Part shown: piece after piece, positions 9,866 through 28,979 of the stretch
Position numbering within the stretch: the first letter of the stretch is position 1
How the letters are laid out: each line of letters starts with the position of its first letter
NCBI GenBank assembly: GCA_002269645.1
Contig: NIVC01000833.1
Coordinates: 1 to 64,000, forward strand
Reading direction: 5' to 3'
Source: Macrostomum lignano
Lineage: Eukaryota
Length of the DNA stretch: 64,000 nt
Made by a program: the position numbers and the translations under genes
The notes under the pieces: generated by a model
What the model saw: the letters and a program-made list of their open reading frames with translations, nothing else
What the model was told of the DNA's origin: nothing
Database searches by the model: none

Positions 9866-12800
9866 ATGAGAAGCAAGACTCCTGAAGCAGAGAGCGAAAA
9901 TCAATTCAATAAGCGAGGCAGTTCAGTCAGCCGTCATCACAGTTTCACGGTTGGCGGTCTGTTTAATTCGATGCAGCACACCTGGAAGATTCGAGACCCA
10001 CCACCACTCAGCAAGCAGCTGTCAGACGAGCTTCTTAATTCGGTCTGTTCGCATTTTGTCTGGCTGCCAAAGCGGCAGTGCAGCAGTTCCTGCAAGTGTT
10101 CGGACGTCAAACAATTACCAGTCGATTTGTCTGCCCTGATTCACTGTAGCAACTATTTTTCATTGCTGATGCAATACGTCAATGGTCGGTGAGCATAAGT
10201 AGCACCATAAACTCTGTATAGTAAAGTAAGACGTTATACGTTATATTGAAGTTTCTCTCCCTCCCTGCGCCTTGTAGCCATTCCTAGCCAATCATTTCTT
10301 AAGCCTAGGCTAGAGTGAAATAGTATAGTGGACTAGCGATCTGCGCCCCCCGTCGGGGAGGCAACAAAAAAAGGATTTTTTTAATGCTATACATTTACCT
10401 TTTGACCTTGTACAGTCGCTATTGTTAGTTTCTAAAGTAAAATGATGTTTAAATCACTCAGGCATCAGCCCTGAAACAGAGCTGTCCAGCCTACGATATG
10501 AGCTTGTGAGCTTTGACATCACAGCCTCTCTTCAAGCCATGCCTTAATCCTTACTCTCCCTTGACATCTCAGCAACTCCCCATATGAGCCTTGACATCCC
10601 AGCAACTCCCCATATGAGCCTTGACATCTCAGCAATCCCCCATGAGCCTTGACATCCCAGAAACTCCCCATATGAGCCTTGAAATCTCAGCAATTCCACC
10701 ATTAGTCTTGACTTCTCATCTGTGCCCGGTGGGTTGTTCGCAGTTGATTGTCTTAATTGTGTCTTTGAGTGATACCAAAGGTACTCCGATTGCATCAGAT
10801 ATTTCCCTGAAATGGTTCCTATGCACCAGTAGATTCTGTCCTGCTGATCAATGTGACTCGTCTCAGTTGTTTGGCGACAGCTTCTGATCACGAAAGGGCA
10901 TTGAGCAATTTCTTAGTCGCAAAACATGCACTATTACGGGAATATTTCTGATCGAACGGTGCAAGTTTCATGAAAATCGATTGAGCCGTTTTTTCTGAAA
11001 TCAATCACTTACCTAGATTGGTAGATATCGAAAACTCATTTTATAATTTAGCATAGCGGATTGAAAACTGTGTCCATTCCCAAATAACTCTATTAAAAAG
11101 AAAAACATGTGCTCAGCTATTTACAATCTGTCTTCTAGTGAAGAGTGCCCCTGTGCAGATGATACTCAAACGCTGTCTTATATAATCATTTTTACCCCTC
11201 CCCCGCAGGGTGCTCCAACTGCCAAGCAACCAGCTCCCTTTCTTAGAAAGAGGTTTCCAAGCTTTTCTCAGCTTCGCAAACGACTCGCCATTCAAAGTCA
11301 CAGACGGGAACGCCATGGACTTGTACATGACTGCCGACTTTTTCCTCTGTCAAGAACTTAGCGCAAAAGTTCTGCAATTTCTTGCCGAGCGCTTCAAACA
11401 AGACGTGCATTTCGCTTTGCACCTGCTGATGGAGATTGACGGATTCTGGCTGCCTGAGCTGGAAAGAGTTGCCATGGAGGCGGTCCTGAGCAAATTTACT
11501 AAAATTTTTGAAGCAACAAATTCTCCAGAACAGTGGTTGAAGCTCAGCGCTGATCTGGTGAGAGATGCTATTTATAACATATGCTTATTTGCTCATGATC
11601 ATCACCCTGGTGCTAAAGCCCCTTGTGCTAAAGCCCCTGGTGATAAAGCCACTGGTGCTAAAGCCCCTGGTGCTAAAGCCACTGGTGCTAAAGCCCCTGG
11701 TGCTAAAGCCCCTTGTGCTGAAGCCCCTTGTGCTATAGATTTTTCTATAGTCATTCATTCGAGTATTTCCCATTCTCATCCGTAGGTGCATCGCATACTG
11801 AGTCACAACGCTTTGAACTGTCAATCAGAGGAGCAGGTGCTGGCTGCTGCTGCTGGCTGGCTACGCGCCAACCCCGGCCACCAGCGAGCGGCCGCGCGGC
11901 TCTCCGAGTGCGTCCGGTTCGGTCTGCTCGAGCCCGGCCAGAGAGCTCGGCTCAGCATGAGCTATCCGGATCTGATGCGCTGGTCACCGCCTCCCTGGTC
12001 TGTCGCCATGCTGAATAACTCTGCAACGGGAAAGAGCCGAACTCGGCACTCTGGTGGGGGCGCGAATTCTGTCAACTCGAGGCCAAGGGAGCCGCACGAG
12101 GTGAGACTAAAGTGTATGGCCCAATGGGAGCCAGCTAGCGCTAGAGAAAGCTTTTTCAGCAATTGCATTGGCCCTGCTTCTCGACTTTTGCCATCGAAAA
12201 ATTTACCGTTGAGCTTTCGAATCGTGGAAATCGACCCACTTTCAACATTATCATCACAGCAACCTCTTTTTAGCGAAAACACACTCAGAATTGCACACAG
12301 ACAAACTCAAAGAGCACTAAAACACGCTAGTTTTTGAGTTGCTGGAGCTGCAGGATAAAGCAATCTGACGCACGATGAGTCGCCGAGTCGCCCTCGTCCG
12401 TCCAAGCGACCGGTTGCGCAGTCGCCGACTCCAGCTGGCAGGCCGCATCATCGGCGCCGAGTCGCCTGTCCTGCCCACAGCCTTCCTTCTCCACTTCCTC
12501 AACTACCGGCTAACATTTATAGAATATTTACACACCACTATGCAGATTGTGCTCGTGTTCGGCGGCTGGGGTCAAAGACCTGCGCCCATCGCAGTCGCAG
12601 GCAGAGTGGCAGCAGAAGCTACCAACCAATCGGCGCACGATGCCGATAATGCAGCAAACCAGCAGCAACAGCAGGTGCCGCAGGTTCAGACCGCTACCGG
12701 CACAACGGGTCCTCAGGCGGCATGTCAAGTGTACAACCCGCGAGCCGACTGCTGGCTTCTTCGCTGTCCGAACAGTGGAAGCAGAAGTAGGACTGGCCAC

Positions 12801-14137
12801 GGTCTTCCATCGAATCACATCGGTCAGCTGGGCGCTCGCGTCTACTCCGGCTGCCTGCTGGTTGACGGAGTCATCTACGTCATCGGCGGTTACGACGGTC
12901 AGCAGGCGTTGCGGGCTGTGTGGCGCTACAGCCTGCGCCAGCCCGAGCTTGGCTGGCACATCGGCTCCTGTCTGACGCATAAACGGTACTACGTCAGCTG
13001 CGCGGCCACCGAGACGGGCGCGATGTACGCCATCGGCGGCCACTCCGGCGAAGTGGTGGCGCAAGATCAGCGCGGACTGACTGCCCGGCTTAGCTCCGTT
13101 GAACGGCTTCAAGCTGGGGAGAGCGTCTGGATTGAGGTTTGCAGCTGCTAACTGTTGTCTGTAACTTGCTGAATGATTGCTGATTGAGTTATTGCGTTTT
13201 TCGATACTGCATCCGGAAGGCGTATCTATGTACAAATAGGTGTGCACCAGAGTTTTGCAGGCGTGTTCATGCCGAAATTTGCAGCTGGGTTCACGCAGAG
13301 CTCTAACCGTGATGTTGATGCTTTTGCTGTCGAATGTTAGGTGAATACAAAAGTCTGAATTTTCTTTACCTCGACCCAGGTCGCCAGCCTGCACGTGGTG
13401 CGCAGCGACGCCGGCGCCGCAGCCATTGGCGAGAGAGTCTTCGTAGCCGGAGGTTTCGACGGGCAGCGCTACCACGACACGGCCGAATTGTACGACCCGG
13501 ATGTTGACCAGTGGACTCTCATTGGTCGTATGTGCCATCCGCGAAGTGGCGTCGCTCTGGTTGCTATTGGCGACGCAGTCTATGCAGTTGGGGGCAACGA
13601 TGGGGAGAAGAGGCTGCGCTCGATCGAGAAGTACCGACTCAGTGGACTGGACAACGAATGGGTAGAGGTAGGACAGGTGAGAGAACAGACTTCTACGCTC
13701 GTATGTGATGTAGGTTCAGAATGAGAATGAGAATTGATACCTGTACACAGATGCAGAATGTGAACATGGGCACAAACTGTTCACAGATACAGGAAGTGTA
13801 AACAGGTACAACACACGCGCGAAGACCACGGCACATTTACGATGCGCATAAATATTTTTTTAGATACAAATGCAACCCAGTCAGCTGTACCCAATTGCAG
13901 ATGCTGCAAGCCAAGAGCAACCTGTCGGCCGTCGCCCTGGACGGTGGCACCCGAATTCTGTCCATCGGTGGCTGGTCGGACGACGGTCAGCCAGGAGTTT
14001 TGGCCACCTCCGAGACCTTCTGCTTGTGCAGCGGAGCGTCGAAGCGGACAGCGAATTGCGGCTTCGCAGCGTCGGCCACGTCTGCCTGCGTGCTCCGGGA
14101 TCATCAAACTGCTCAGTGGCTTCTGCAGCAGCTATAG
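9866..14137 (+). CDS. KLHL10-like: BTB-BACK-Kelch protein, KLHL10-like; exons about 9866-10188, 11209-11557, 11786-12100, 12546-13136, 13380-13676, 13901-14137
   Basis: BTB (ALIHCSNYF; NAMDLYMTADFF), BACK (ILSHNALNCQSEEQVLAAAAGW...VRFGLL) and Kelch blades with RYYVS / RSDA / RSGV / KSNL, the KLHL10-type series. Splice phases are consistent; the start codon is less certain. Confidence 0.85.
10558..10700. repeat. About 30-bp tandem repeat (CCTTGACATCTCAGCAACTCCCCATATGAG), about 4.5 units, in the first KLHL intron
   Basis: Visible tandem units. Confidence 0.85.
11605..11732. repeat. 15-bp repeat (GGTGCTAAAGCCCCT)n, reverse complement of the 59.9-63.9 kb satellite, in KLHL intron 2
   Basis: About 8 units; the unit is the reverse complement of AGGGGCTTTAGCACC. 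Confidence 0.9.
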
Positions 14138-14560
14138 AGACAGCAACAGGAACTATTGCTCAACTCAACAGTTTATTGATCTAAGTAATCAAAATTTTAG
14201 TGGGTTAAAAACTTATAAAAATTTTATTAGTAGTCGAATGTGACGAAATAAGTTTGCGTTTTGCAATTAAAAATTCGTGACTAAAGCATTGATTAGGAGG
14301 TATATTAATGCCCTTATTTTGAATGCATAAGAGCATATTTCACACAGGTATTCAATATCCCGAAGGAAGATAATAAATTTAATTTCAGAATGAAATATAT
14401 ATATAAATACATTTAAAATAAATTTCTTCTTGATATGCTCTGTGAAGTATGATGATCAAATTCAAAGCTGATGGATTTTTGCCTCGGTATTTTGTTAACA
14501 CCCGAAAGGTTTTGACGTTTTGAGATCAAGTTATTCAGCTTCCGCAGTTATTTTGTACTG

Positions 14561-14810
14561 CATCGTCGCCCAAGCCACTGCGGCATCACCGGTAATGAGG
14601 TGGCGGATGCCGCGGTCAAGGAGTGCGTTGAGGAAGTCGGAGTACTGGCCAGCCTGGTCGTCAAGGCAGCCCGGAGACGCAGCAAGCACAGGTCCGAGTG
14701 GAGACACAAGAGAATGAAGAGTGTGTACGAAGGCTCGCAGCAGGTGAAGCCTTAGCGAACACCCCAGTGAAGCGAAGCTCTATGGGAGTGGCTTAAGAAG
14801 CATCCGCCGT
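14561..14810 (+). mobile_element. Retroelement RNase H C-terminal fragment
   Basis: The frame reading PSHCGITGNEVADAAVKE matches the RNase H motif (P)SH.GI.GNE.AD..AK. Confidence 0.6.
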
Positions 14811-14837
14811 GAAACAAGTAAGGGATCGTTGGCAGTA

Positions 14838-14839
14838 TC

Positions 14840-14877
<38 letters not shown>

Positions 14878-15322
14878 AAGAATACGCAGTTAGCGTCACA
14901 GGGCGCGCTTCAAGGCCAGGTCGCGAATGAACGCCACGCCGCCGGCCGAATCCGGGACGCCGGCGTCAGCCAGCAGGCAGTCGACGAAACGCCGAGTGCG
15001 CGCCTGCCCCTGCCAGTAGGGTGCCTGCAGCGTTAGCAGCAGCACCTCCTGCACCGGCTCTGGGCAGTACGACTCAGCGCGGATGATGTGGCCTGCCAGC
15101 TGGGGTCGCCGACGGCGCAGCAGGTCGCTTGGACGGACCAGGCCGGCGCGGAGATACTAAAGCCGCGTTGGTCACTCGCTCGTAGCCGATCTTGAAGGCG
15201 GCGCGCAGCAGGCCAGCGTGCACCGCGTCAACTTGCTGCTCGAGCGACTCCGTCAGCGTCCAGGTCTCGGCGTTGTACAGCAGGACGGTATCGATCACCG
15301 CCTGGAACAACGCCGCCCGAAT
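14838..15322 (-). mobile_element. 5'-truncated RTE-clade LINE 3' end with (TTG)n tail
   Basis: FQAVIDTVLLYNAETWTLT...LLRAAFKI...QLAGHIIR is the typical RTE C-terminus. The stop is followed by a (TTG)n tail at 14838-14876. Confidence 0.8.
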
Positions 15323-16661
15323 GCTAAAAAATTGACCAACACTGTCAGTCTTAAAGACAATTCAACTTGAAGATACCAAAATAATTGACAGATTTTATAT
15401 TTATCTCAAAGTTTCAGTCTCAAACTTAATATTTTTACCATATACCGGTACACGTTGAGTAGTTAGAGGAGCACTATTATGGTTGCATGGATGCATAAGG
15501 CACGTACATCTAGGCTTTACAATAAGTAAAACACGGAACCAGTACTCAAACTTCGGTATCACCTGGGACGTAAGAGCCAAAAGAGACCTTGGGATTCAAT
15601 AAAAAGAAGTGACAATCATTTTAGTCCACAAACTTGGACTCATCAAAGAAGCATGCGTTTCGTTGAAATTATGTGGAAATGGCACTCTTATGAGCAGGTT
15701 CGAACTGTTAGGATACATTTTCATAACATTGTTTTCCATGGGTCTAAAATAAAACTTGCGCGTATTAATAAATATTTGACATACAGAGGGTTGCTACAAT
15801 CCACATCGGTAGCCAGAATTGCCGTAAAAATTTTCTAAACGTACGTGCATTTTGATTTCAGTTTCAGTGTTGTTACAATTCTGAAACTTTAAATATAATA
15901 TCCGTAAGAACCCTAAAATTTTATTTTATCTTTCAGATTCATATTTCAAGCCAAGCAAAAAGTCCCTGTTTCAAGGAGTGGCCACTCGTAGAAAGTTAAG
16001 CCTCAAACTTTGTTATAATGATTATGTTTTTAGATATTGACATTTGATAGCTGCATAGTTTTTATATATTTGATATACGCAAGTTTAAAATGGTTACACT
16101 TAAGATTGCAAGCAGGAAAAACAGAACCAGTTCTCGCAAATCGGGATTTTTACAATACACATTTGCAGTAGTTATAGCAATTCTCATGGGCTTGAAATCA
16201 TGCTGTACGTATATGTGGATTTAAAAATTGTGTGTCTCTGATGATAGATAATAAGCATTATAGTCGTGATCACCTGGGAAATACGAGTCTAAAGGGTATT
16301 AAGAATTTTCTAAGAACAAACGCTCCGATTCAAAAAAGTAAACAATAAAAATGCTTACACAATGTAGCAAATCAAATTCGAGATTGTGACGGTTAAGTTA
16401 ATATATGCTCGATGTACATTGAAGAAAAGCGCGTTGTACTGTGCAATAATGTCAAATGAACATGTGTATGAATGTGCCTGTGTATGAATGAATGTGTATG
16501 AATGTGAATTTTACGACATAATGAGTGCTCCAATAGGCTTGTCGTGAATATCAGATTCCTAGAGACGGTCATTTACAAAATTAAGTAAATAAAAAAGCAC
16601 GTCCTCGGGTCTCAGCCTCTGCATCAGCGACTGTCTCAGAGCCATCGCGTTGCTCCAGCGA

Positions 16662-19579
16662 TTAAGCGGAGGCTTCTTGCGGTGTGGCAACTGCTGCTTC
16701 GTCCGAAGCCGAGCGGCAGCGAGCGCAGCGCCTGCGGAGCCACACAGACAGCACGACAATTCCGGCGATGCCCAATATGATGCCAACGAGGGCCGCGATA
16801 CCTGCCGGAGACGGAGAGGCGGACTCCGAAGTGGACTCCTGAGCAGAGCTGTAGGGCGCCGATTCGGCATCAGAACTGCTGCTGCTGCTGCTGTTGTAGC
16901 TGCTGCTACTGTCGATTGAGCTGGTTTCGTCATCGCTCGAAGCTGAGCCGAAGAAGCCGAGGAAGCGCCACACGTGCTGTGTGATATTAAAGGACCAACG
17001 CCAGCCGTGATGTTTCACGACAGTGACGGGATGCTCGACCAACTCATAGTCGGGCTCCTCGAATGGCGGGCGCCTCACTTGAATCTGGGCGAGCCCGGAG
17101 CGACCCTTCACGCACTGCATGATTGCGCAGCCGTCGACCGTGTCCAGAGTCACCTGGCTGAATTCTTTCGGGCAGTGCTTCGGCGCATCCAGACCTCCGC
17201 TTGTCTCCGACAGCGGGTTGCCCGAGTCGCAGGAAAAGAACCCGGCGAACGGGATTCTGCCGCGAGAAGCCCTGCTCAGGTCCATACTCAGGCACAGGTA
17301 GATGTCGCGTCCGACCTTGTAGGGCCGGAAGTGCTCCGGACACTCTTTGCTCTGCGTGATGTCGTTGAGGAATCGTCCGTCCGCAGCGTAGGCGCCTGCG
17401 TAGAACATGCCGGGGTTGGGATCAGCTTCGAAGTGCGACGAGCAGTGCACCAGTAGGCAGTCAGGACGGTGTACGAGTCGACGCATTGGGTTCGCTCTTC
17501 GTGGTGAACGCACCAGATAAACCAGGAAGTGCAATGCTTCGTCTTCCAGCAGCGCTTGCTGTTGCGGCCAACGGTCGAAAGAAGCTTCACCTGGAAAAGC
17601 AACACTTTACGGATCGTTAAGTAGCCTGAAACGGTCCGCTGGTAGGACAGAGTGTTATTGAGAAGCAGAAAGTTGTACCCTACACTTAAATCGAACTACT
17701 CGTAAGTACAAATGTAGCTAGATTTACTCGAGGGGCCGTAGCCCAGTGGTGCCCAGCGCGGCGCTCTGATGTGCCAGCGGCCTGGGCTCGATTCCAAGTG
17801 CAGTCGCATTAACTTAGGGCTAAATTGGAATCTCGGCTTGGGTCTGCTCGAGCAATAAACACCCTTGAGGGCCAACCTCCAAGGCAAAATGAAGTGTACA
17901 GGCCTAACAATAAATAAAGTTTGGGCCGCTGTACACTCCTGTGCTGTGCGTATGACTTCATATGTATGATGCGCGTGTGTGCTTGCTCAGGGGAGTCGGC
18001 GGAATGGGCAGTAATGCCGCCTCTCTTAAAGTGAGCCAGGGTGCACACAACCCTCTGCCTCTAACTGAAAAAGCTAAATTTACTCACCGGCTCATACCCA
18101 ACTTGACACCTGGTCCCGCCCGTGATGGGGTTGAGCAGAACGCCGCTGCCTGCACCGGAGCACAGGTTGAAGCCCGCGCGGGGGTTCGACTCCCAGCACT
18201 GCTGATAGACGCCAGCGAAGCTGAAGTTGGTGCCGGGAGCCTCGCACTGGCCGGCTGTATTGGCGATGGGGTCAAAGTTTCTCGAATTCGGGTCCAGACA
18301 GCCCTTGACGGTGTTGGCCTTGTAGTAGCTGAAATCAGTCATGGCAAACCTTCTTTTGAGCAGCATTCTTTTGAGCATGCTTGAAAAGCTTCTCATTCGT
18401 AGATGCTCGGTAATACTTACCGCATTACGGCATCCTCGATCTCCTTCCGCAGCTTCAACATGTGCGTCATGGGCAGGTTCGGAAGGGAGCGCCTGTTGAC
18501 CACGCTGTACAGCGGCTCGCCATTGCGATCGATCGGCACCAGATTCTCGTGTAAAGACTTGATCCAGTCGTCCAGCTTCGGGTTCGAACCAAGGACTGGT
18601 CCGCCCGAAGTTCGTAAAATCATTTTGCGAATACTATTCTTGTACTTGGTGACTTCTTCATTCGTCACGGAAACACCGATGCTAATATTGGAGCTGAAAA
18701 AACGAAGAAAGCTGAAGCTTGCTGCTGCTGAAAACTTGTTCTGCATGAAGTTCGAGTCGTCGATGGAACGAGAATTAAAGAAGTCCAGCTTTTCAAGAAT
18801 GCCTCCAGCCTCTACAGAGGTGATCACGTGGGTTCCGAAGTCCCGGACGATTAGATCGGACAGGTATCGAGCCAGCTTTGTTTGATTGTTCACCAGCGCG
18901 TTCATCACTTCCGTCAAGCGATTGGTGAGCGCTGCAGACAGCTTGAAGTCTGGTTGAAGCTTCGAAGAGTAGAGTCGGTAACGAAGCTGAGACCTGCCAA
19001 TATCCAGTTTGTTCTGCACCGCGACCTTCTTCACCTGTTGAAACTCGTTAGACAGTTTTCCGCCAATCCTAAATGCAGCGATTTTTCCACTGGCTTCTAG
19101 ATTGATCGAGACGCTTAGCGAGCTGGTATAGTTGCTAAAGTGGTCAATCACTTCGGACATCACCTCTATGTTGGACTCCTTTCTCGGGTACAGAATCACA
19201 TTCTTCGGCAGAACGTACATGCCGTCATCTGACAGGGCGCAGTCTGTAAACGACAGGTCGGCTACGAGACCCATGTCCTTGTTTCTCAGGTTGTCCCAGC
19301 CGCCACCTGTCAATCAAGAAGATGAGGTTTTCATTTTCCATCTTAGAAAAACAGCAAGGTAAAACGCTTGCCAACACAAAATATTTCAAGTGTCAAAAAA
19401 TCTCGTTAATTACCTGGCATCGAAGAGAACCGAGTGATCGAGCTTCCGCTATTAAGCAGCCACACGCACCTGTTGCTGCCATCCGAGGCGGGCAAGCTCT
19501 GATTGAGGTTGCTAACTGGTGCAGCCCCAATGCAACAGCAAAGACCAGCGAGGATCGAAAGAACCAACGGCAGTTGCAT
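16662..19579 (-). CDS. MPEG1: Perforin-2/MPEG1 paralog C' (mirror copy of C); exons 19579-19414, 19306-18421, 18328-18088, 17590-16662; 1-nt frameshift at about 17418-17423
   Basis: Reverse complement of the gene at 22274-25191, with identical ORF translations. Confidence 0.93.
17730..18071 (+). mobile_element. tRNA-derived SINE in intron 3 of MPEG1-C' (mirror of 23782-24123)
   Basis: Head GGGGCCGTAGCCCAGTGG (A box) and GGGCTCGATTCC (B box); A-rich end. Confidence 0.8.
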
Positions 19580-19949
19580 TCCGGCGAGTCAGTGTTGGTG
19601 AAGCCAAATTGCTTTCCTGTCTCAGTCTGCAGGCTCTCGCTCTGCCCGATTTCCTGCCGAGATCCCACAATCGCTTCTCATATAAATACTAAAGTCAAGA
19701 GGGCCGTGTTTCTATCTTTAGTTTCCGCTTAAATATCAAATTCAGCAGATCGAGCTTGTTTCTATCTTTAGCATCTGGGTGACACCATTGTTTGCGGACT
19801 TTCTTCTCACCCAACAATGCATTAAATTCAATTGTACGAGCGTAGCTTCTTGTTTCTATGTTTAGCAGTTTCAAACAGAAGGTGAACTTATTGCCTCCAT
19901 CAAAATACGAATGTCTAAACTTAGCAACAAATGCAAAACACAGTGCGGT

Positions 19950-21673
19950 ACTCGTAGACCATGCGTGGCGAGCACGCTGCCATTGATAAGAATGCAGACC
20001 CCAAAACCGGAGAGACCGTCTTTTAGGGATCCGTCTGTGTAGCAGTGGACCTCCTGGGGATTCCAGTGGTCGTTAGCCTCCTCACGGGGAGGAAGACTGA
20101 CCTTGAATCGAAGACAGAGGTTGAGCGTGCGGGGTTCCCCGTCCGAAAGGACGTTGAGACCTCCGCTCTCCTGAAATCTTTGAGACAGAGGTCGGAATGA
20201 GGCAGAAGCTTGCGCTTAGCCATTGCCCTCTGGGGCTTGAGAGTAATGCCGGTGTCAATGAGACGCCGGGCTGCCTTGACCGCCTCACTGCGGACGAAAA
20301 TGTCCATCGGAGACCAAGGAGGCCAAGGAGGTCAAGGAAGGCGTTGAGGCCGTCGAATGGAGCAGAGGGCGGGGCGCTCATTATCATTCGACAAGCGCGC
20401 CCCTGCACTCGTTTAAGAGCCTCGAAGCAGGTCTTAATCTGCAGGGCACTCGCCCAGATCAGTCCGGCGTAGGAGATCGCCGGCCTGACCATAGCAGTGT
20501 AGATCCACCAGAGGCGTTTAGGGGTAAGGCCCCAAGTAGTGCCAACGGGCCTGCGCAATTGCGCCAGGATCGCGAAGGCCTTTTTAGTCTTGGCATGAAC
20601 ATGCGGGGACCAGTTCAGCCTGTGATCAAGGGTGACCCAAGATACTTGACTTGCTTACGGAAGGGATTTCCTGTCCGTAGAGCGTGAGATTGCGGGATTG
20701 CCATTTCGTCCTGCTGGTGAACATGACCACAGCGGTCTTAGTCTCAGAGAGCTTCAGACCGCATCGGTCCGCCCAGCGTTCAGCAGTGTTAATGAAGTTC
20801 TGAAGGAGATCACGCAGGGTGTCTGGCGATGGCCCAGAGGCTACCGCCGTGACATCGTCCGCATAACCGACCTTCAGAATAGGGTTAGGACAGGCGTCCC
20901 GTAGAAGCTCGTCAATAACCATGTTCCAGAGAATTGGAGAGAGGACTGCTTGAATTGAACTGAATTGAATTGAATTGCTTCAAGGTAGGCGGTCTGGTCC
21001 ATTTGGCGTTTAGATTTGGTGGCCCTGCGGTGTAACCGTTTGGCTTTGCGGCGGAGGTCGCCAAGCTTGGGGTTCCACCACGGGGCCGAAGTTTTGCCCC
21101 TGTAGGCTTCGAAGGCAGGAGGCCTCGAAAGCGGAGGTTAGCGAATCCGTGAGAACAGCCGCATAAACCTCCGTTTCTTGGCAAGAGTCAATGGAGGTCG
21201 GAAAGCAGGAGTTCCAAAGGGTTGAATCCAGGATGAACCTGAAAGCCTCCCAATCGGTGTTCCTGGCATTCCGTCTCCAGATGATATGGTCATTGCGTTG
21301 TGCGCTGGCCACGTGAAAGGAGTTGAGCTTGTGGTCAGAGAGAGACGCCACAGGAAGGACCTGCCACTCATCAATCCTCTGGTAGAGTCTTGGTGTGGCA
21401 AGTGTGGCATCAAGGACCTCCGCCCAACGCCCGTTATCAAAAGTAGGGGTTTTGCCTGAGTTGCAGAACTCAAGCGTGGTGGAGGCAACATAAATCAGGA
21501 GGTCTTCACCTCTCTGATTAATGTTTGTGCTGCCCCAGTGAGTTGGTGAGCATTTATATCGCCAGCAACCATTAGCTTGTAGTTTCTGGCAGAACAAAGT
21601 TCCACCAGTGAGATAAGCTCCTCCGAGACAACAGCCTTGTCGCCCGGTAAGTAAACCGAGGTGATCAGGGTCG
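19950..21673 (-). mobile_element. Degenerate, internally deleted RNase H-bearing LINE (R1/LOA/Tad-like): APE endonuclease, RT and RNase H fragments
   Basis: ITSVYLPG..AGDINAH..WGS..LSDH (APE); VLSPILWNMVIDELL and GYADD (RT); TWGLTPKRLWWIYTAMVRPAISY; YTDGS (RNase H, at about 20030-20045). Confidence 0.88.
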
Positions 21674-22273
21674 AGATTTCAGGAGAGCGGAGGTCTCAAC
21701 GTCCTTTCGGACGGGGAACCCCGCACGCTCAACCTCTGTCTTCGATTCAAGGTCAGTCTTCCTCCCCGTGAGGAGGCTAACGACCACTGGAATCCCCAGG
21801 AGGTCCACTGCTACACAGACGGATCCCTAAAAGACGGTCTCTCCGGTTTTGGGGTCTGCATTCTTATCAATGGCAGCGTGCTCGCCACGCATGGTCTACG
21901 AGTACCGCACTGTGTTTTGCATTTGTTGCTAAGTTTAGACATTCGTATTTTGATGGAGGCAATAAGTTCACCTTCTGTTTGAAACTGCTAAACATAGAAA
22001 CAAGAAGCTACGCTCGTACAATTGAATTTAATGCATTGTTGGGTGAGAAGAAAGTCCGCAAACAATGGTGTCACCCAGATGCTAAAGATAGAAACAAGCT
22101 CGATCTGCTGAATTTGATATTTAAGCGGAAACTAAAGATAGAAACACGGCCCTCTTGACTTTAGTATTTATATGAGAAGCGATTGTGGGATCTCGGCAGG
22201 AAATCGGGCAGAGCGAGAGCCTGCAGACTGAGACAGGAAAGCAATTTGGCTTCACCAACACTGACTCGCCGGA

Positions 22274-25191
22274 ATGCAACTGCCGTTGGTTCTTTCGATC
22301 CTCGCTGGTCTTTGCTGTTGCATTGGGGCTGCACCAGTTAGCAACCTCAATCAGAGCTTGCCCGCCTCGGATGGCAGCAACAGGTGCGTGTGGCTGCTTA
22401 ATAGCGGAAGCTCGATCACTCGGTTCTCTTCGATGCCAGGTAATTAACGAGATTTTTTGACACTTGAAATATTTTGTGTTGGCAAGCGTTTTACCTTGCT
22501 GTTTTTCTAAGATGGAAAATGAAAACCTCATCTTCTTGATTGACAGGTGGCGGCTGGGACAACCTGAGAAACAAGGACATGGGTCTCGTAGCCGACCTGT
22601 CGTTTACAGACTGCGCCCTGTCAGATGACGGCATGTACGTTCTGCCGAAGAATGTGATTCTGTACCCGAGAAAGGAGTCCAACATAGAGGTGATGTCCGA
22701 AGTGATTGACCACTTTAGCAACTATACCAGCTCGCTAAGCGTCTCGATCAATCTAGAAGCCAGTGGAAAAATCGCTGCATTTAGGATTGGCGGAAAACTG
22801 TCTAACGAGTTTCAACAGGTGAAGAAGGTCGCGGTGCAGAACAAACTGGATATTGGCAGGTCTCAGCTTCGTTACCGACTCTACTCTTCGAAGCTTCAAC
22901 CAGACTTCAAGCTGTCTGCAGCGCTCACCAATCGCTTGACGGAAGTGATGAACGCGCTGGTGAACAATCAAACAAAGCTGGCTCGATACCTGTCCGATCT
23001 AATCGTCCGGGACTTCGGAACCCACGTGATCACCTCTGTAGAGGCTGGAGGCATTCTTGAAAAGCTGGACTTCTTTAATTCTCGTTCCATCGACGACTCG
23101 AACTTCATGCAGAACAAGTTTTCAGCAGCAGCAAGCTTCAGCTTTCTTCGTTTTTTCAGCTCCAATATTAGCATCGGTGTTTCCGTGACGAATGAAGAAG
23201 TCACCAAGTACAAGAATAGTATTCGCAAAATGATTTTACGAACTTCGGGCGGACCAGTCCTTGGTTCGAACCCGAAGCTGGACGACTGGATCAAGTCTTT
23301 ACACGAGAATCTGGTGCCGATCGATCGCAATGGCGAGCCGCTGTACAGCGTGGTCAACAGGCGCTCCCTTCCGAACCTGCCCATGACGCACATGTTGAAG
23401 CTGCGGAAGGAGATCGAGGATGCCGTAATGCGGTAAGTATTACCGAGCATCTACGAATGAGAAGCTTTTCAAGCATGCTCAAAAGAATGCTGCTCAAAAG
23501 AAGGTTTGCCATGACTGATTTCAGCTACTACAAGGCCAACACCGTCAAGGGCTGTCTGGACCCGAATTCGAGAAACTTTGACCCCATCGCCAATACAGCC
23601 GGCCAGTGCGAGGCTCCCGGCACCAACTTCAGCTTCGCTGGCGTCTATCAGCAGTGCTGGGAGTCGAACCCCCGCGCGGGCTTCAACCTGTGCTCCGGTG
23701 CAGGCAGCGGCGTTCTGCTCAACCCCATCACGGGCGGGACCAGGTGTCAAGTTGGGTATGAGCCGGTGAGTAAATTTAGCTTTTTCAGTTAGAGGCAGAG
23801 GGTTGTGTGCACCCTGGCTCACTTTAAGAGAGGCGGCATTACTGCCCATTCCGCCGACTCCCCTGAGCAAGCACACACGCGCATCATACATATGAAGTCA
23901 TACGCACAGCACAGGAGTGTACAGCGGCCCAAACTTTATTTATTGTTAGGCCTGTACACTTCATTTTGCCTTGGAGGTTGGCCCTCAAGGGTGTTTATTG
24001 CTCGAGCAGACCCAAGCCGAGATTCCAATTTAGCCCTAAGTTAATGCGACTGCACTTGGAATCGAGCCCAGGCCGCTGGCACATCAGAGCGCCGCGCTGG
24101 GCACCACTGGGCTACGGCCCCTCGAGTAAATCTAGCTACATTTGTACTTACGAGTAGTTCGATTTAAGTGTAGGGTACAACTTTCTGCTTCTCAATAACA
24201 CTCTGTCCTACCAGCGGACCGTTTCAGGCTACTTAACGATCCGTAAAGTGTTGCTTTTCCAGGTGAAGCTTCTTTCGACCGTTGGCCGCAACAGCAAGCG
24301 CTGCTGGAAGACGAAGCATTGCACTTCCTGGTTTATCTGGTGCGTTCACCACGAAGAGCGAACCCAATGCGTCGACTCGTACACCGTCCTGACTGCCTAC
24401 TGGTGCACTGCTCGTCGCACTTCGAAGCTGATCCCAACCCCGGCATGTTCTACGCAGGCGCCTACGCTGCGGACGGACGATTCCTCAACGACATCACGCA
24501 GAGCAAAGAGTGTCCGGAGCACTTCCGGCCCTACAAGGTCGGACGCGACATCTACCTGTGCCTGAGTATGGACCTGAGCAGGGCTTCTCGCGGCAGAATC
24601 CCGTTCGCCGGGTTCTTTTCCTGCGACTCGGGCAACCCGCTGTCGGAGACAAGCGGAGGTCTGGATGCGCCGAAGCACTGCCCGAAAGAATTCAGCCAGG
24701 TGACTCTGGACACGGTCGACGGCTGCGCAATCATGCAGTGCGTGAAGGGTCGCTCCGGGCTCGCCCAGATTCAAGTGAGGCGCCCGCCATTCGAGGAGCC
24801 CGACTATGAGTTGGTCGAGCATCCCGTCACTGTCGTGAAACATCACGGCTGGCGTTGGTCCTTTAATATCACACAGCACGTGTGGCGCTTCCTCGGCTTC
24901 TTCGGCTCAGCTTCGAGCGATGACGAAACCAGCTCAATCGACAGTAGCAGCAGCTACAACAGCAGCAGCAGCAGCAGTTCTGATGCCGAATCGGCGCCCT
25001 ACAGCTCTGCTCAGGAGTCCACTTCGGAGTCCGCCTCTCCGTCTCCGGCAGGTATCGCGGCCCTCGTTGGCATCATATTGGGCATCGCCGGAATTGTCGT
25101 GCTGTCTGTGTGGCTCCGCAGGCGCTGCGCTCGCTGCCGCTCGGCTTCGGACGAAGCAGCAGTTGCCACACCGCAAGAAGCCTCCGCTTAA
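22274..25191 (+). CDS. MPEG1: Perforin-2/MPEG1 paralog C; exons 22274-22439, 22547-23432, 23525-23765, 24263-25191; apparent 1-nt deletion at about 24429-24435
   Basis: MQLPLVLSILAGLCCCIGAAP signal peptide (exon 1 = 55 codons + 1 nt), GGWDNLRNKDMG, MACPF, P2, Ser-rich stalk, TM GIAALVGIILGIAGIVVLSVWL and a short tail. Confidence 0.93.
23782..24123 (-). mobile_element. tRNA-derived SINE in intron 3 of MPEG1-C with 14-bp TSD
   Basis: TSD GAGTAAATTTAGCT (23768-23781) / GAGTAAATCTAGCT (24124-24137); A- and B-box-like head. Confidence 0.82.
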
Positions 25192-26207
25192 TCGCTGGAG
25201 CAACGCGATGGCTCTGAGACAGTCGCTGATGCAGAGGCTGAGACCCGAGGACGTGCTTTTTTATTTACTTAATTTTGTAAATGACCGTCTCTAGGAATCT
25301 GATATTCACGACAAGCCTATTGGAGCACTCATTATGTCGTAAAATTCACATTCATACACATTCATTCATACACAGGCACATTCATACACATGTTCATTTG
25401 ACATTATTGCACAGTACAACGCGCTTTTCTTCAATGTACATCGAGCATATATTAACTTAACCGTCACAATCTCGAATTTGATTTGCTACATTGTGTAAGC
25501 ATTTTTATTGTTTACTTTTTTGAATCGGAGCGTTTGTTCTTAGAAAATTCTTAATACCCTTTAGACTCGTATTTCCCAGGTGATCACGACTATAATGCTT
25601 ATTATCTATCATCAGAGACACACAATTTTTAAATCCACATATACGTACAGCATGATTTCAAGCCCATGAGAATTGCTATAACTACTGCAAATGTGTATTG
25701 TAAAAATCCCGATTTGCGAGAACTGGTTCTGTTTTTCCTGCTTGCAATCTTAAGTGTAACCATTTTAAACTTGCGTATATCAAATATATAAAAACTATGC
25801 AGCTATCAAATGTCAATATCTAAAAACATAATCATTATAACAAAGTTTGAGGCCTAACTAAATTCTATTCTCTAAATCCTTACAAGACACATCATAAACC
25901 CATCAAAACGCAGTCCCCATCACAAATTTTATAGAGAATGTGATTTTTAAGGTTTGTGATAACGCCCCCTTCGTTTCTGTTATCGATCGCTACATCTCCT
26001 CCCCCTCTCTCTGGCCTCTCATTCTCCTCTGCTAAGCTTTCGTGTTGCATATTATTTCAGCTTCCGTTTCGGCTTCTAACTCTGATTCATTCTCATGCAC
26101 AGAATATTCGTTTTCACGAATCTTGCAAAGCCAAGTCAGATGTTCTTCATCAGAACTCTCTTCTTCCGATTTTTATTTATTTTTTCTGGCGTGGCTTCCC
26201 TTGCTTG

Positions 26208-26851
26208 TAGGGGTCAAAATCCCGGGATCCCGGGATTCACTGGGTCGGGATTCAATCCCGGATAGTTAATGCTATGTTTTTATAATGTCTGATAAAATAA
26301 CAATTAGCAAGACAGTTAGGTAAAATATGGAACATACATGCATCCATGTCCACTCTCCGTTGCACACTTTGCAAAATCTTTGATGTTTGAGTTCAGTCTT
26401 GTTTAAATAATTTAAGGTTGTTTTTAAATTTTGAACTTATCGTGCATGTCGTGACAACCTTGACAACGTGAATGCCCACTGCCTAGACAGTAGTATGTTG
26501 TGATTGTGAATGTAATGTATACATTCATATTGCTTTGCACAGTGGTACATGTACATTACATTATTTAATATATGTTATACATAAAATATATGCATATTAC
26601 AATATTGATATTACGAGTAGTAATATACTACTATAATATTTGCTATACTACAAGTATAATAACATCACTGTTATAATATTATATATTACATTACCAGCCT
26701 AGCATTTCCCCTTTAGCTCCGACCAAAACTGTAAGCCTTATAAAAATGTCAGTCACAGCATTTTAATGACATTGTAACAATGTTACGACAAGGATGGTAC
26801 TGGGAAATATCAATCCCGGGATTGACAGAATACGGGATTTTGTGACCCCTA
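26208..26851. mobile_element. Non-autonomous hAT-type MITE (644 bp) inserted in the degenerate Gypsy
   Basis: TIRs TAGGGGTC.AAAATCCCG / CGGGATTTT..GACCC(C)TA; 8-bp TSD CTTGCTTG / CTTGCTTA; subterminal CGGGAT repeats. Confidence 0.75.
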
Positions 26852-27572
26852 CTTGCTTACTACTGATTGTTCTACCTTCTGCTGATTTTCCTTACTTAGA
26901 TGCTTAGCTTTCTTCCGGCTTTTCTTATTTGTAACTTCTGTTACGAGTATCTCAGCGCTCTCCTGGCTTCCCTTATCTATTGGTTCTTTCACTGTCACAG
27001 AATTTGGCACTGGCGCTATATTATCCCTATGCACTAATAACTTATTACCTACTAATTCGCCTTCTTCTTTCTGAATCTTAAAAACAACTTCTGAGATTTG
27101 CTTTAGCACTCTAAAAGCGGCTCTCTTTTTCCTATGGAACTTATTAGATTCATAAATGTTAAGCTGTGGATTATTAAATAACACTAAGCTTCCTACTTCG
27201 ATAATTTTTTGCTTTTTCTGACTTTCGGCGGCGGTTCGTCGTTTGTTCTGCACCTTTCTCAAATTTTTCCTTTACTAATTTCCTAGCACTTTTTAATCTC
27301 TCTGCTGCATGCTCGGAAACATAAGTTGGATAATTAGAATATTGCTTTGGCTCTCTGATCTCACTGTCTATGGGCAGAACCGTCTCTCTGCCAAATAATA
27401 AGTGCGGCGAATAACCTGTAGTCTGATTAACACTGGTTCTAACTGCGACTAGGGCGGCTGGAATTAACAGGTCCCAATTGCTGTGATCCTTTTCAATTAG
27501 ACACGTGACTATCGATTTCACTTGTTTATTCAATCTTTTTACTAAACCATTGCTTTGAGGGTGTGAAGAGTT

Positions 27573-28979
27573 TGATCGGGTGGTGATCAGTCACCCGAAA
27601 ACTGCCACTTCCAGACGTTAAGCCTGGGAACAAAATCCAGTGATCACTTTCCGGTGCGGGCTCCTCTTCTTTGTCGGGCGGGTTCTCCGAGCTCGTTTCT
27701 TAAAGGATTCTTCCTCCGGAGTAGTCTTCTTGAACTCTACAATCGGCCGAATTTTTTTTTTATTAGAGGCAGGGGGTTGTGTGCACCCTGGCGCACTTTA
27801 AGCGACATAGGCACACAACCGGCGAGAAGCATTACTGCCCATTCCGCCGACTCCCCTGAGCAGGCATACAAGCGCGCGGATACGTACGCAGGCACACACT
27901 CACACAGGAGTGTACAGCGGCCCTAACTTTATATTATCGTTAGGCATGTACACTTCACTGCGCCTTGGGGGGTTGGCTCTCAAGGCCGTTAATTGCACGA
28001 GCAGAGCCAAGCCGAGATTCCAATTCAGCCCCAAATTAATGTGACTGCACTTGGAATCGAGCCTGGGTCGCTGGCACACCAGAGCAGCTGCGCTACCGCT
28101 GGGCTACGGCCCCCCTTAACAATCGGCCGAATGTGAGAGCGTAACAATTTACTCCGTCGACGTCGAAGTATCCTCGAGTGCCGAAATCAATATGTTCCCC
28201 GAGTGCGGAAATTCAGAATCAACGATGCGCCCTAATAACAAAGTCAACTCTATAACAATGACGAGGTCCTCTAGAAAAGGCGTCTTCTTCTAGAAATAAC
28301 GGAATCGGAGTCGTGTGCTCCTATCGGTTACTCTAGGGTATCAAAATCAATCAAATCAATAATCCTCTAAGGGTATTGGAATCGGTCCACAGATCCTATC
28401 CAATCCCTTAGGAAAAGGGAGGCCTCAAATTCAATAGACTCAGTAAAATTAACTGAGCAGTAACGGCCGGCAATAACAATCGCTCTCAATAATCAAAATA
28501 ACGAAGACTTGAACAAAGCTTACCAATTGGTGTTTCTCTTCCTCAGAGATGTAGCCTCGTTTGGCTGCTCTTACAAAGCCCAAGATCTTTGGAGGCTGCT
28601 CCGAGTCTGAGATTTCAGCTCGGGTTTTGCGTTTATATTTATACACAATTTGTCGGCCTTGAGTCGACCTTGAGCTCAAAACCGGTTTTTTGATGAGTTC
28701 ACGAAAGGAATTTTATTATTTGACAGGTGGGTTTTTTTGATAGAAGTGGGTGAGACTTGGGTCACATTCAGGTTAACATTGACCATATTTGGAAGTTCTA
28801 GAAATAGATGTTGAGAACCGGTTTTTCGGACAATAGCATAGCCACTCGCTGTTTGCGTGATGCTATTGGCATTACTAAAAACAGAGTATGACGCATAGCT
28901 ATTTTTAAATTTGTGTTCATAATTTTATCTTACTACTTCTAGTAGGCTACCATGTTTGGAGATCTCTACATGTAATATT
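27573..28979. other. Unidentified insertion of about 1.4 kb splitting the integrase motif HTFTT|HPQSNG
   Basis: Integrase codons resume on both sides; GAGTT is duplicated at 27568-27572 and 28980-28984. Confidence 0.6.
27753..28118 (-). mobile_element. tRNA-derived SINE with poly(A) tail and 14-bp TSD
   Basis: TSD ACAATCGGCCGAAT at 27739-27752 and 28119-28132; T-run at 27752-27761; head GGGGCCGTAGCCCAGCGG...GGCTCGATTCC. Confidence 0.88.

What the first reader, a model, noticed from the sequence alone, without database searches (positions are those of the whole stretch)
16000..25853. Perfect 4,180-bp inverted duplication of a whole MPEG1 gene with an inner breakpoint inside a LINE
Arms 16000-20179 and 21674-25853 appear base-identical with no indels: 18 mirrored ORFs all sum to 41853, and both carry the same SINE and frameshift. 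The 1,494-bp spacer is the body of a LINE whose 3' (RNase H) piece is itself duplicated, so the rearrangement broke inside the LINE, as expected from a fold-back/template-switch event. It yields a head-to-head gene pair with ATGs 2.7 kb apart. It is either a very recent copy-number gain of an immune gene or an assembly artefact; the unique spacer argues against a simple hairpin-read chimera.
Basis: partly seen in the sequence, partly recalled or inferred. Interest (0 to 1): 0.75.

Follow-up and report, generated by a model that had tools for sequence, protein, structure and literature searches.

The report
Flatworm immune-gene palindrome kept uniform
This is a real mirror-image duplication of a pore-forming immune gene (MPEG1/perforin-2 type) in the flatworm Macrostomum lignano; it is not brand new or an assembly error, because a second diverged chromosome copy has it with the same breakpoints, and its two halves appear to be kept alike by copying from one another, an ordinary though tidy example of a known phenomenon.

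Summary
Window 16000-20179 and 21674-25853 are exact reverse complements. The true arms are 4,186 bp (15994-20179 / 21674-25859) with one mismatch, around a 1,494-bp spacer. The window is Macrostomum lignano contig NIVC01000833.1 (Mlig_3_7 assembly). Each arm holds a 4-exon MPEG1/perforin-2-like gene (annotated Mlig003757g3/g4). Most of the apparent frameshifts are introns. One real 1-bp frameshift in exon 4 is a C-run length difference and is probably a consensus error.

A second contig, NIVC01002244.1, differs in its flanks by 0.9-1.9% and carries the same palindrome with all four junctions at the same bases. Its arms differ from each other at 13 substitutions. Twenty substitutions and about 8 indels separate the two contigs yet are shared by both arms within each contig. 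That pattern indicates one older origin followed by arm-to-arm gene conversion. The spacer is inverted relative to the flanks between the two contigs, as expected from arm-arm crossover. The inner junction carries a 19-nt filler and a 7-nt duplication, which looks like a repair footprint.

Consensus or polishing effects may inflate the "perfect" identity. This is a new member of a known kind, of modest interest.

The parts
15994..20179 (.). Left arm of the palindrome (4186 bp); the gene is on the minus strand
   Evidence: exact reverse complement of 21674-25859 except at 15999/25854. The same outer boundary is seen in contig NIVC01002244.1.
20180..21673 (-). Unique spacer (1494 nt): body of a degenerate, 5'-truncated, internally deleted LINE lying on the minus strand
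   Evidence: Pfam Exo_endo_phos_2 (21010-21695, E=8e-8) and the RVT_1 C-terminal part (20626-20922, E=4e-6, below gathering score). 99.4% identical to the contig-2 spacer but in the opposite orientation relative to the flanks.
21674..25859 (.). Right arm of the palindrome (4186 bp); the gene is on the plus strand
22274..25191 (+). MPEG1/perforin-2-like gene, right copy (BOX15_Mlig003757g3 or g4). Exons 22274-22439, 22547-23432, 23525-23765, 24263-25191. As written, the ORF stops at 24565 (531 aa); adding one base gives 740 aa.
   Evidence: Spliced model with GT-AG introns. It is identical to the annotated protein P0122. MACPF E=5e-24. Solved MPEG1 structures match at E=4e-108 over residues 52-640.
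16662..19579 (-). MPEG1/perforin-2-like gene, left copy (mirror image). Exons 19414-19579, 18421-19306, 18088-18328, 16662-17590. As written, the stop is at 17288.
   Evidence: Mirror coordinates of the right copy; two identical annotated products on this contig.
24431..24433 (+). Frameshift site in exon 4: a CCC run (mirror position 17420-17422). The ML2 window-type protein P0123 implies CCCC (KLIPNPGM); contig 2 has CTCC (KLISNPGM).
23781..24121 (-). SINE-like repeat inside intron 3 (mirror copy 17732-18072). It is antisense to the gene and has tRNA-like A and B boxes.
   Evidence: An 81% copy lies at 27756-28113, and box A TAGCCCAGTGG was found by motif search. Box-B-like GGCTCGATTCC was seen by reading the same sequence. 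ARAGORN and Rfam give no call.
19871..20160 (-). LINE-derived inner part of the left arm, downstream of the RT and including a CYTDGS motif (mirror 21693-21982)
   Evidence: Colinear alignment (52% identity) to the M. lignano LINE fragment in P0125, running from the spacer into the arm.
20161..20179 (.). 19-nt filler at the inner end of the left arm (plus strand CTCCGCTCTCCTGAAATCT), flanked by a 7-nt duplication TTGAGAC at 20154-20160 and 20180-20186
   Evidence: Deleting 26 nt restores the LINE reading frame and a gapless match to P0125. No other copy of the 19-mer exists in the window. It is not homologous to EN domains.
21674..21692 (.). The same 19-nt filler at the inner end of the right arm, abutting the truncated endonuclease end of the LINE. 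This is the likely original novel junction.
15999..15999 (.). The only arm-to-arm mismatch in the window (A here; its partner 25854 is C)
   Evidence: contig 2 has G at this position, which restores pairing.

Best explanation
The feature is a genuine genomic palindrome in Macrostomum lignano. It has two 4,186-bp inverted arms around a 1.49-kb spacer, and each arm carries one complete MPEG1/perforin-2-like gene, arranged head to head.

It arose once, by an inverted duplication. The inner breakpoint lay in a degenerate LINE just upstream of the gene, and the junction carries a 19-nt filler. This happened before the two large duplicated genome copies (homeologous chromosome variants) represented by contigs NIVC01000833.1 and NIVC01002244.1 diverged.

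Since then the arms have exchanged sequence with each other. Non-crossover exchange (gene conversion) keeps them almost identical within each copy while the two copies drift apart. At least one crossover between arms has flipped the spacer in one copy. A 26-nt templated repair copied the filler from one arm into the other.

Shown: the structure, its presence with identical junctions in a second diverged contig, the concerted pattern of differences, the opposite spacer orientation, and the family identity of the gene. Inferred: gene conversion as the homogenising process, fold-back or template switching as the origin, and the view that the 1-bp frameshifts are consensus errors rather than true pseudogenisation.
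For: Structure.

Source and annotation: the window equals NIVC01000833.1:1-64000, and the two arm genes are annotated with an identical 531-aa product.

Second contig: it is colinear on both flanks and has the same palindrome. Its arms are 99.64% identical (13 substitutions plus 1 indel), and all four junctions lie at the same bases.

Concerted pattern: 20 substitutions and about 8 indel events (including 14-bp and 23-bp indels) separate the contigs but are shared by both arms within each contig. Thirteen of these substitutions and four of the indels lie in the outer 500 bp. Long reads there are anchored in four different unique flanks, so assembler mixing is unlikely.

Divergence: between contigs, flanks differ by 0.94-1.9%; arm versus arm within a contig differs by 0.02% and 0.31%.

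Spacer: it is inverted relative to the flanks between contigs.

Repair footprint: a 26-nt insertion with a 7-nt duplication lies exactly at the arm/spacer junction, and removing it restores the LINE frame.

Biological context: the sequenced line carries three homeologous subgenomes with about 1.4-2.4% SNP divergence, and 180 Mb of the assembly is duplicated at >=95% identity (PMC10733133; PMC5730564).

Precedent: arm-to-arm conversion with >99.9% identity and rare spacer inversions is documented for human Y palindrome P6 (PMC3723533).
Against: No raw reads could be examined. The assembly is Canu on noisy CLR reads followed by Pilon polishing with Bowtie2-mapped short reads, and 93% of read pairs multi-map in this genome. 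Read correction or polishing could therefore make near-identical arms look more identical than they are.

Both arms share the same probable homopolymer error, which shows that the two arm consensuses are not fully independent.

The spacer orientation in either contig could be a mis-join, because the assembler must bridge a 4.2-kb repeat.

The four clustered arm-private substitutions in contig 2 are not seen in ML2 protein models and might be polishing errors.

Both contigs come from one assembly of one read set. They represent independent molecules but not an independent experiment.
Confidence: 0.75

Rival explanations
1. The palindrome is real and old, but the 'perfect' identity of the window's arms is produced or exaggerated in silico. 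Canu read correction and Pilon polishing with multi-mapping reads would have pooled evidence from both arms. The true arms would then differ by a few tenths of a percent, as in contig 2, and part of the 'concerted' pattern would be consensus spreading.
For: The assembly method is Canu plus Pilon with Bowtie2, and 93% of read pairs multi-map. The same probable homopolymer miscalls occur in both arms of each contig. The inner 3.7 kb of the arms is almost identical even between contigs (0.19%) while the spacer and flanks are not.
Against: The window arms are not literally the same consensus, because one mismatch is retained at 15999/25854. Contig 2 keeps 13 arm-private substitutions, so pooling is not complete. 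The arm-shared, contig-specific 14-bp and 23-bp indels and 13 substitutions lie within 500 bp of unique flanks. Contig-specific differences are preserved in the spacer, which is the region furthest from any flank.
Confidence: 0.2
2. It is a very recent copy-number gain of the immune gene, private to this locus.
For: There are 0 differences in 4180 bp between the arms.
Against: The same arms, spacer, filler and outer junctions are present in a second contig whose flanks differ by 0.9-1.9% and which has structural differences such as a 2.9-kb block present only in the window. Both arms of each contig share contig-specific substitutions and indels.
Confidence: 0.03
3. It is an assembly artefact: a fold-back or missed-adapter chimeric long read, or a graph mis-traversal, created a second arm that does not exist.
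For: CLR data are known (own knowledge) to contain palindromic missed-adapter reads. REAPR scored only 64% of the assembly's bases as error-free.
Against: There is a 1.5-kb unique spacer, and both outer flanks are unique and non-complementary. The palindrome is not at a contig end. The structure is reproduced in a second, diverged contig whose arms differ from each other at 13 sites. The older ML2 assembly also yields a UniRef100 entry whose name line reads n=2 for this gene; that is a hint only, because the two ML2 loci were not examined.
Confidence: 0.04
4. The palindrome formed in one homeolog after the two had diverged, and was later copied into the other by a ~10-kb inter-homeolog conversion or recombination event. 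It would then be younger than the flanks.
For: Divergence between contigs is lower in the spacer (0.54%) and arms (0.62% overall, 0.19% in the inner 3.7 kb) than in the flanks (0.94-1.9%).
Against: The outer 500 bp of the arms is the most diverged segment (2.6%), which does not fit a single recent transfer of the whole block. Arm-to-arm conversion is still required to explain the contig-specific but arm-shared differences.
Confidence: 0.1

Closest known systems
Sex-chromosome palindromes of primates (human Y P1-P8, X-chromosome palindromes)
   Same: Both have inverted arms around a unique spacer, arm-to-arm identity above 99.6%, arms that evolve in concert by intrachromosomal gene conversion, occasional spacer inversion by arm-arm crossover, and a protein-coding gene in each arm (PMC3723533 and PMC8327919, listed).
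   Different: The arms here are 4.2 kb, not 9 kb to 1.45 Mb. The host is a hermaphroditic flatworm without sex chromosomes. The cargo is an immune-effector-type gene, not a testis gene family. The comparison here is between homeologous copies within one genome, not between species or individuals. GC bias in conversion could not be polarised (9 versus 9).
Fold-back / template-switch inverted duplications (MMBIR/FoSTeS-type events, and polymerase-theta-type templated insertions at junctions)
   Same: Both show an inverted copy starting a short distance (1.5 kb) from the original, a breakpoint inside a repeat element, and a short filler at the junction. This mechanistic comparison rests on my own knowledge.
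   Different: No microhomology is detectable at the inner junction, and no template for the 19-nt filler was found in the window. The second (outer) junction shows nothing diagnostic.
MPEG1 / perforin-2 (solved structures 6U23, 6U2J, 6SB3)
   Same: The protein has a MACPF domain plus the P2 ectodomain, homologous over residues 52-640 (E=4e-108). It also has an N-terminal hydrophobic leader, and a C-terminal hydrophobic segment with a short tail in the frame-corrected ORF.
   Different: Identity to vertebrate and mollusc MPEG1 is about 33-39%. The gene has 3 introns. As written in this assembly, the ORF is cut to 531 aa. It is one of at least 4 paralogs within 26 kb. No functional or expression data were found.
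Missed-adapter palindromic chimeras in PacBio CLR assemblies
   Same: Both show reverse-complement duplication of kilobases at perfect identity in a CLR-based assembly.
   Different: Such artefacts fold back with no spacer, or only adapter sequence, typically at contig ends, and the copy runs back into the complement of the same flank (own knowledge). Here there is a 1.5-kb genomic spacer, two different unique flanks, and a second diverged contig with the same structure.

Membership tests
MPEG1 / perforin-2 | MACPF pore-forming domain | tested here: met
   Pfam PF01823, E=5.4e-24, 86 bits against a cut-off of 21.5, on exon 2.
MPEG1 / perforin-2 | Full ectodomain (MACPF plus P2 domain) homologous to solved MPEG1 | tested here: met
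   phmmer against the PDB: 6u23_A at E=4e-108, query residues 52-640 matching chain residues 27-614. The best named database relatives are MPEG1 from many animals.
MPEG1 / perforin-2 | Signal peptide, single C-terminal transmembrane helix and short cytosolic tail | tested here: inconclusive
   These are seen only by reading the sequence. The N-terminus is MQLPLVLSILAGLCCCIGA. The segment IAALVGIILGIAGIVVLSVWL followed by a basic tail is present only in the frame-corrected 740-aa ORF. No predictor was run.
MPEG1 / perforin-2 | Uninterrupted coding sequence | tested here: not met
   As assembled, exon 4 is frameshifted at 24431-24433, giving 531 aa. The contig-2 copies are frameshifted in exon 3, giving 431 aa. 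ML2-assembly protein models read through both sites, so the breaks may be consensus errors.
Genomic palindrome with arm-to-arm gene conversion | Long inverted arms of very high identity around a unique spacer | tested here: met
   Arms of 4186 bp: 1 mismatch in the window and 99.64% identity in contig 2; spacer of 1494 nt.
Genomic palindrome with arm-to-arm gene conversion | Arms within one copy are more alike than orthologous arms between copies (concerted evolution) | tested here: met
   20 substitutions and about 8 indels are fixed between contigs and shared by both arms of each. Arm-to-arm divergence is 0.02% and 0.31%, against 0.62% between contigs and 0.9-1.9% in the flanks. Caveat: these are assembly consensuses, not reads.
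Genomic palindrome with arm-to-arm gene conversion | Spacer inversion through arm-arm crossover | tested here: met
   The spacer has opposite orientation relative to the flanks in the two contigs. The arm next to the left flank joins the RT side of the spacer in the window and the EN side in contig 2.
Genomic palindrome with arm-to-arm gene conversion | GC-biased direction of conversion | tested here: inconclusive
   The fixed differences are 9 AT-to-GC and 9 GC-to-AT between the contigs. They cannot be polarised without an outgroup.
Fold-back / template-switch inverted duplication | Microhomology or templated filler at the novel junction | tested here: inconclusive
   No microhomology is seen at 21673/21674. 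A 19-nt filler is present, but no template for it exists in the window and it has no EN homology.
LINE (non-LTR retrotransposon) in spacer and inner arm | Apurinic-type endonuclease and reverse transcriptase domains in order on one strand | tested here: met
   Exo_endo_phos_2 at E=8e-8, above its cut-off. RVT_1 C-terminal part at E=4e-6, 27.1 bits, just below the 29.6 cut-off. Both are on the minus strand with EN upstream of RT. EN homologs were also found by exhaustive HMMER.
   No Pfam RNase H hit at E<=1 on 19871-20215. Only a CYTDGS motif is present, conserved with the P0125 LINE fragment.
tRNA-derived SINE (intron 3 repeat) | tRNA-related head with A and B boxes; dispersed copies | tested here: inconclusive
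   A second copy at 81% identity lies at 27756-28113, and an A-box-like motif was found by search. A B-box-like motif was seen by reading the same sequence. ARAGORN and Rfam find nothing.
Long-read fold-back assembly artefact | No genomic spacer; the copy continues into the complement of the same flank; not reproduced in independent molecules | tested here: not met
   The spacer is 1494 nt of LINE. The flanks are unrelated. The structure is reproduced in a diverged contig.

The most novel reading that the evidence does not exclude
A small autosomal palindrome carrying a pair of pore-forming immune-effector genes has persisted in at least two subgenomes of a neopolyploid flatworm. It is actively homogenised by arm-to-arm gene conversion and flips its spacer. 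It also shows unusually low divergence between homeologs in its inner 3.7 kb, which would point to exchange between subgenomes or to selection on the shared bidirectional upstream region. If so, sex-chromosome-style palindrome dynamics would operate on immune genes in an invertebrate without sex chromosomes.
Probability: 0.3. Interest if true: 0.45.

Novelty: new member of a known kind. Interest (0 to 1): 0.3.

Why it matters
For the scan, this case shows that a perfect inverted duplication in a long-read assembly need be neither brand new nor artefactual. Checking a homeologous or duplicate contig can separate age from identity.

For biology, it gives a compact and tractable example (10 kb, PCR-sized) of concerted evolution and spacer flipping in a palindrome outside vertebrate sex chromosomes. 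The organism supports transgenesis and has inbred lines. The cargo is an MPEG1/perforin-2-type gene within a four-gene local cluster.

For users of the Mlig_3_7 annotation, it flags that the truncated products of Mlig003757g1-g4 (431 and 531 aa) probably result from C-run miscalls that short-read polishing could not fix, because the arms are indistinguishable to short reads.

Tried and rejected
(1) Ectopic conversion from the neighbouring paralog as the source of the clustered arm-private variants in contig 2. Rejected: paralog B carries the window/CR base at those sites, and no other paralog protein matches.

(2) The 19-nt inner filler as a continuation of the LINE endonuclease domain. The word-indexed search found nothing. 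Exhaustive HMMER hits start only at residue 9-11, and the upstream residues of the hits are unrelated. Rejected.

(3) A template for the filler elsewhere in the window. None found with up to 3 mismatches.

(4) The third homeolog as an 'empty site'. NIVC01000118.1 loses synteny at window position 14411, 1.6 kb before the palindrome. The RING-finger gene that follows has no counterpart in the window or in contig 2, so it is uninformative.

(5) An older, larger palindrome. No residual inverted similarity exists between the flanks.

(6) Independent short-read (Logan) contigs through exact ORF look-ups. The arm ORFs are not in the collection, and P0001 has no DNA on record.

(7) tRNA or Rfam identification of the intron repeat. 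Nothing above threshold.

(8) Literature on this gene or on flatworm MPEG1. Nothing found.

(9) A poly(A) signal (AATAAA or ATTAAA) between the stop codon and the outer boundary. None found.

Full report
**Observation.** Window 16000-20179 and 21674-25853 are exact reverse complements: 0 mismatches in 4180 bases and no indels, with position p pairing with 41853-p. The repeat continues 6 bp further out, to 15994 and 25859, with one mismatch at 15999/25854. Beyond that, complementarity is random at about 25%, and a sensitive search finds no degraded inverted similarity between the flanks. The spacer is 20180-21673, 1494 nt. The mirrored ORF list agrees with this.

**What the arms and spacer contain.** Each arm holds a four-exon gene. 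In the right copy the exons are 22274-22439, 22547-23432, 23525-23765 and 24263 onwards, all with GT-AG boundaries. Most of the apparent frameshifts are therefore introns.

- Exon 2 carries a MACPF domain (E=5e-24).
- The whole ectodomain matches solved MPEG1/perforin-2 structures (6u23_A, E=4e-108, residues 52-640).
- As written, the ORF ends after 531 aa because of a 1-bp deficit in a C-run at 24431-24433. Adding one base gives a 740-aa protein with a hydrophobic leader, MACPF, P2, a hydrophobic C-terminal segment and a tail.
- Intron 3 contains a ~350-bp repeat with an 81% copy at 27756-28113. It has tRNA-like A and B boxes on the antisense strand (A box by motif search, B box by reading the sequence), but ARAGORN and Rfam do not recognise it.
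- The spacer encodes, on the minus strand, an endonuclease fragment (21010-21695) and the C-terminal part of a reverse transcriptase (20626-20922). It is thus a 5'-truncated, internally deleted LINE.
- The inner ~300 bp of each arm is the downstream part of the same LINE. A conceptual translation aligns colinearly (52% identity) with a LINE fragment embedded in the M. lignano protein P0125, from the spacer into the arm as far as a CYTDGS motif. Pfam does not call an RNase H domain there.

**Origin of the sequence.** The best protein hits are from Macrostomum lignano. The window is identical to NIVC01000833.1 positions 1-64000 of assembly GCA_002269645.1, Mlig_3_7. The two arm genes are annotated as BOX15_Mlig003757g3 and g4, with an identical 531-aa product (P0122).

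The assembly was made with Canu 1.4 from PacBio CLR reads. It was polished with Pilon using Bowtie2-mapped Illumina reads and RNA-seq, then scaffolded. The authors report 180 Mb of duplicated non-repetitive blocks at >=95% identity (PMC5730564). The sequenced line carries three homeologous subgenomes with about 1.4-2.4% SNP divergence, and 93% of read pairs multi-map (PMC10733133).

**The decisive comparison.** The same 90%-identity protein cluster contains a second identical pair, Mlig003757g1 and g2, on another contig, NIVC01002244.1 of 280 kb.

- That region is colinear with the window on both sides. It has structural differences, such as a 2.9-kb block present only in the window at 26332-29277.
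- Substitution divergence between the contigs is 0.94-1.9% in the flanks.
- It contains the same palindrome: arms of 4193/4191 bp at 99.64% identity (13 substitutions plus one 2-bp indel) and a spacer of 1488 nt.
- Both outer junctions and both inner junctions lie at the same bases.
- In contig 2 the base equivalent to 15999 pairs with its partner, which fixes the true arm length at 4186 bp.

An artefact, or a duplication private to one locus, cannot explain this. The structure exists in two diverged sets of molecules and therefore predates their divergence.

**Concerted evolution.** A four-way alignment of the arms gives the following counts.

| Class of difference | Count |
|---|---|
| Separates the contigs, shared by both arms of each | 20 substitutions, about 8 indel events (including 14 bp and 23 bp) |
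| Private to one arm of contig 2 | 13 substitutions |
| Separates the window's two arms | 1 substitution (15999/25854) |

With a single origin before the split, differences that are arm-shared but copy-specific require transfer between arms, that is, gene conversion. Thirteen of these substitutions and four of the indels lie in the outer 500 bp. Long reads there are anchored in four different unique flanks, so assembler pooling is an unlikely cause.

Arm-to-arm divergence within a contig is 0.02% and 0.31%. That is well below the divergence between contigs, which is 0.62% in the arms and 0.9-1.9% in the flanks.

**Spacer flip.** The flanks of contig 2 align to the window in one orientation, but the spacer aligns in the other. 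The arm next to the left flank joins the RT side of the LINE in the window and the endonuclease side in contig 2. This is what a crossover between inverted arms produces, and it independently indicates arm-arm recombination. It could also be a mis-join across a 4.2-kb repeat, which only reads can settle.

**Junction anatomy.** On the side where the LINE seems to run on from spacer to arm, there is a 26-nt insertion exactly at the boundary. It consists of a 19-nt filler (20161-20179) plus a 7-nt duplication, TTGAGAC at 20154-20160 and 20180-20186. Removing it restores one LINE reading frame and a gapless match to the related element.

The same 19 nt start the other arm, where they abut the truncated endonuclease end (21674-21692). 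The filler has no other copy in the window. It is not a continuation of the endonuclease domain: homologs align only from residue 9, and their upstream residues are unrelated.

My reading, which is inference, is as follows. The original novel junction was endonuclease | filler | LINE downstream part. A later break in the other arm was repaired by copying 26 nt from this arm and end-joining, which moved the arm boundary inward. All four inner junctions in both contigs have this footprint, so it is older than their split. No microhomology is visible, so a fold-back or template-switch origin is plausible but not demonstrated.

**The frameshifts.** The window's two copies lack one base in a C-run in exon 4. 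The two contig-2 copies lack one C in a C5 run in exon 3. Protein models from the older ML2 assembly read through both sites. P0123 is window-type and reads KLIPNPGM; P0001 is contig-2-type and its UniRef100 name line reads n=2. The breaks are thus probably homopolymer miscalls that polishing could not correct in sequence that short reads cannot place uniquely. True recent inactivation spread to both arms by conversion is not excluded.

**Limits.**
- All comparisons are between consensus sequences of one assembly.
- Read correction and polishing may have pooled evidence between arms. I give about 0.2 to the view that the perfect identity is partly in silico.
- The inner 3.7 kb of the arms is nearly identical even between contigs (0.19%), while the spacer (0.54%), the flanks and the outer 500 bp (2.6%) are not. 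I cannot explain this; exchange between homeologs or consensus mixing are candidates.
- A third, more diverged homeolog (NIVC01000118.1) loses synteny 1.6 kb before the palindrome and is uninformative.

**Comparison with known systems.** In behaviour this is a small version of the palindromes of primate sex chromosomes: high arm identity by conversion, rare spacer inversions, and a gene in each arm (PMC3723533 and PMC8327919). It differs in size (4.2-kb arms), in host (a hermaphroditic flatworm), in cargo (an MPEG1-type gene within a cluster of four paralogs in 26 kb) and in the kind of comparison made. It does not fit a missed-adapter or fold-back read artefact. No paper mentions the gene or flatworm MPEG1.

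**Verdict.** The structural reading is right: an inverted duplication of a whole MPEG1-type gene with its inner breakpoint in a LINE. The proposed alternatives, very recent gain or artefact, are both unlikely. It is an older palindrome kept uniform by arm-to-arm exchange. It is a new member of a known kind, of modest interest.

Noticed in passing
window 1500-8300: Two further MPEG1-like genes lie in tandem on the plus strand. Paralog A (ORFs 1838-2713 and 3600-4538) is P0007/Mlig012544g3. Paralog B (ORFs 5853-6635 and 7174-8241) is 77-83% identical at the DNA level to the arm gene. With the palindrome pair, this makes four MPEG1-type genes in 26 kb.
   Followed up: partly
window 26332-29277: A ~2.9-kb block directly right of the palindrome's short right flank is present in the window but absent from the homeologous contig 2. 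It holds gypsy-type integrase fragments (26849-27533, minus strand) and a second copy of the intron-3 SINE-like repeat (27756-28113). It is a transposable-element presence/absence difference between the genome copies.
   Followed up: partly
window 21674-25359 versus 25360-25859: There is a steep gradient in divergence between the two homeologous contigs along the arm. It is 0.19% in the inner 3.7 kb, including non-coding parts, and 2.6% in the outer 500 bp. The spacer is at 0.54% and the flanks at 0.9-1.9%. This is unexplained.
   Followed up: partly
L002 (NIVC01002244.1), equivalent to window 24490-24586: Four substitutions within 97 bp of exon 4 are private to one arm of contig 2, and three are non-synonymous. 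They match no paralog and no ML2 protein model. They may be a real multi-site change or a polishing error.
   Followed up: partly
window 36439-42136: A gypsy-type LTR retroelement has an uninterrupted 1374-aa pol ORF (RT, RNase H, integrase zinc-binding and core domains) and a 299-aa upstream gag-like ORF. More diverged fragments of related elements (65-74% identity) lie at 26.9-31 kb.
   Followed up: partly
window 8900-9600, 46700-49000, 52000-52800, 57100-58200, 59700-64000: There are long minisatellite arrays, for example a 15-nt unit filling 59.7-64 kb at 66-68% GC. The same 15-nt repeat occurs in inverted orientation inside an ORF of the Kelch-type gene at 11605-11746 (94% identity).
   Followed up: no
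window 34768-35312: A 168-nt inverted repeat (88% complementary) has a 209-nt loop. It may be a MITE or foldback element.
   Followed up: no
window 10000-15000; L005 (NIVC01000118.1): A BTB/BACK-Kelch gene (703-aa product) lies between paralog B and the palindrome and is conserved in all three homeologous contigs. The third contig (92-97% identity) loses synteny at window 14411, where a RING/B-box gene follows instead.
   Followed up: partly
window 17651-17699 and 24154-24202: A sub-threshold Rfam match to the TMV_UPD-PK3 pseudoknot (24 bits against a gathering score of 34, E=0.026) lies inside the intron-3 repeat, mirrored in both arms. It is almost certainly a chance match.
   Followed up: no
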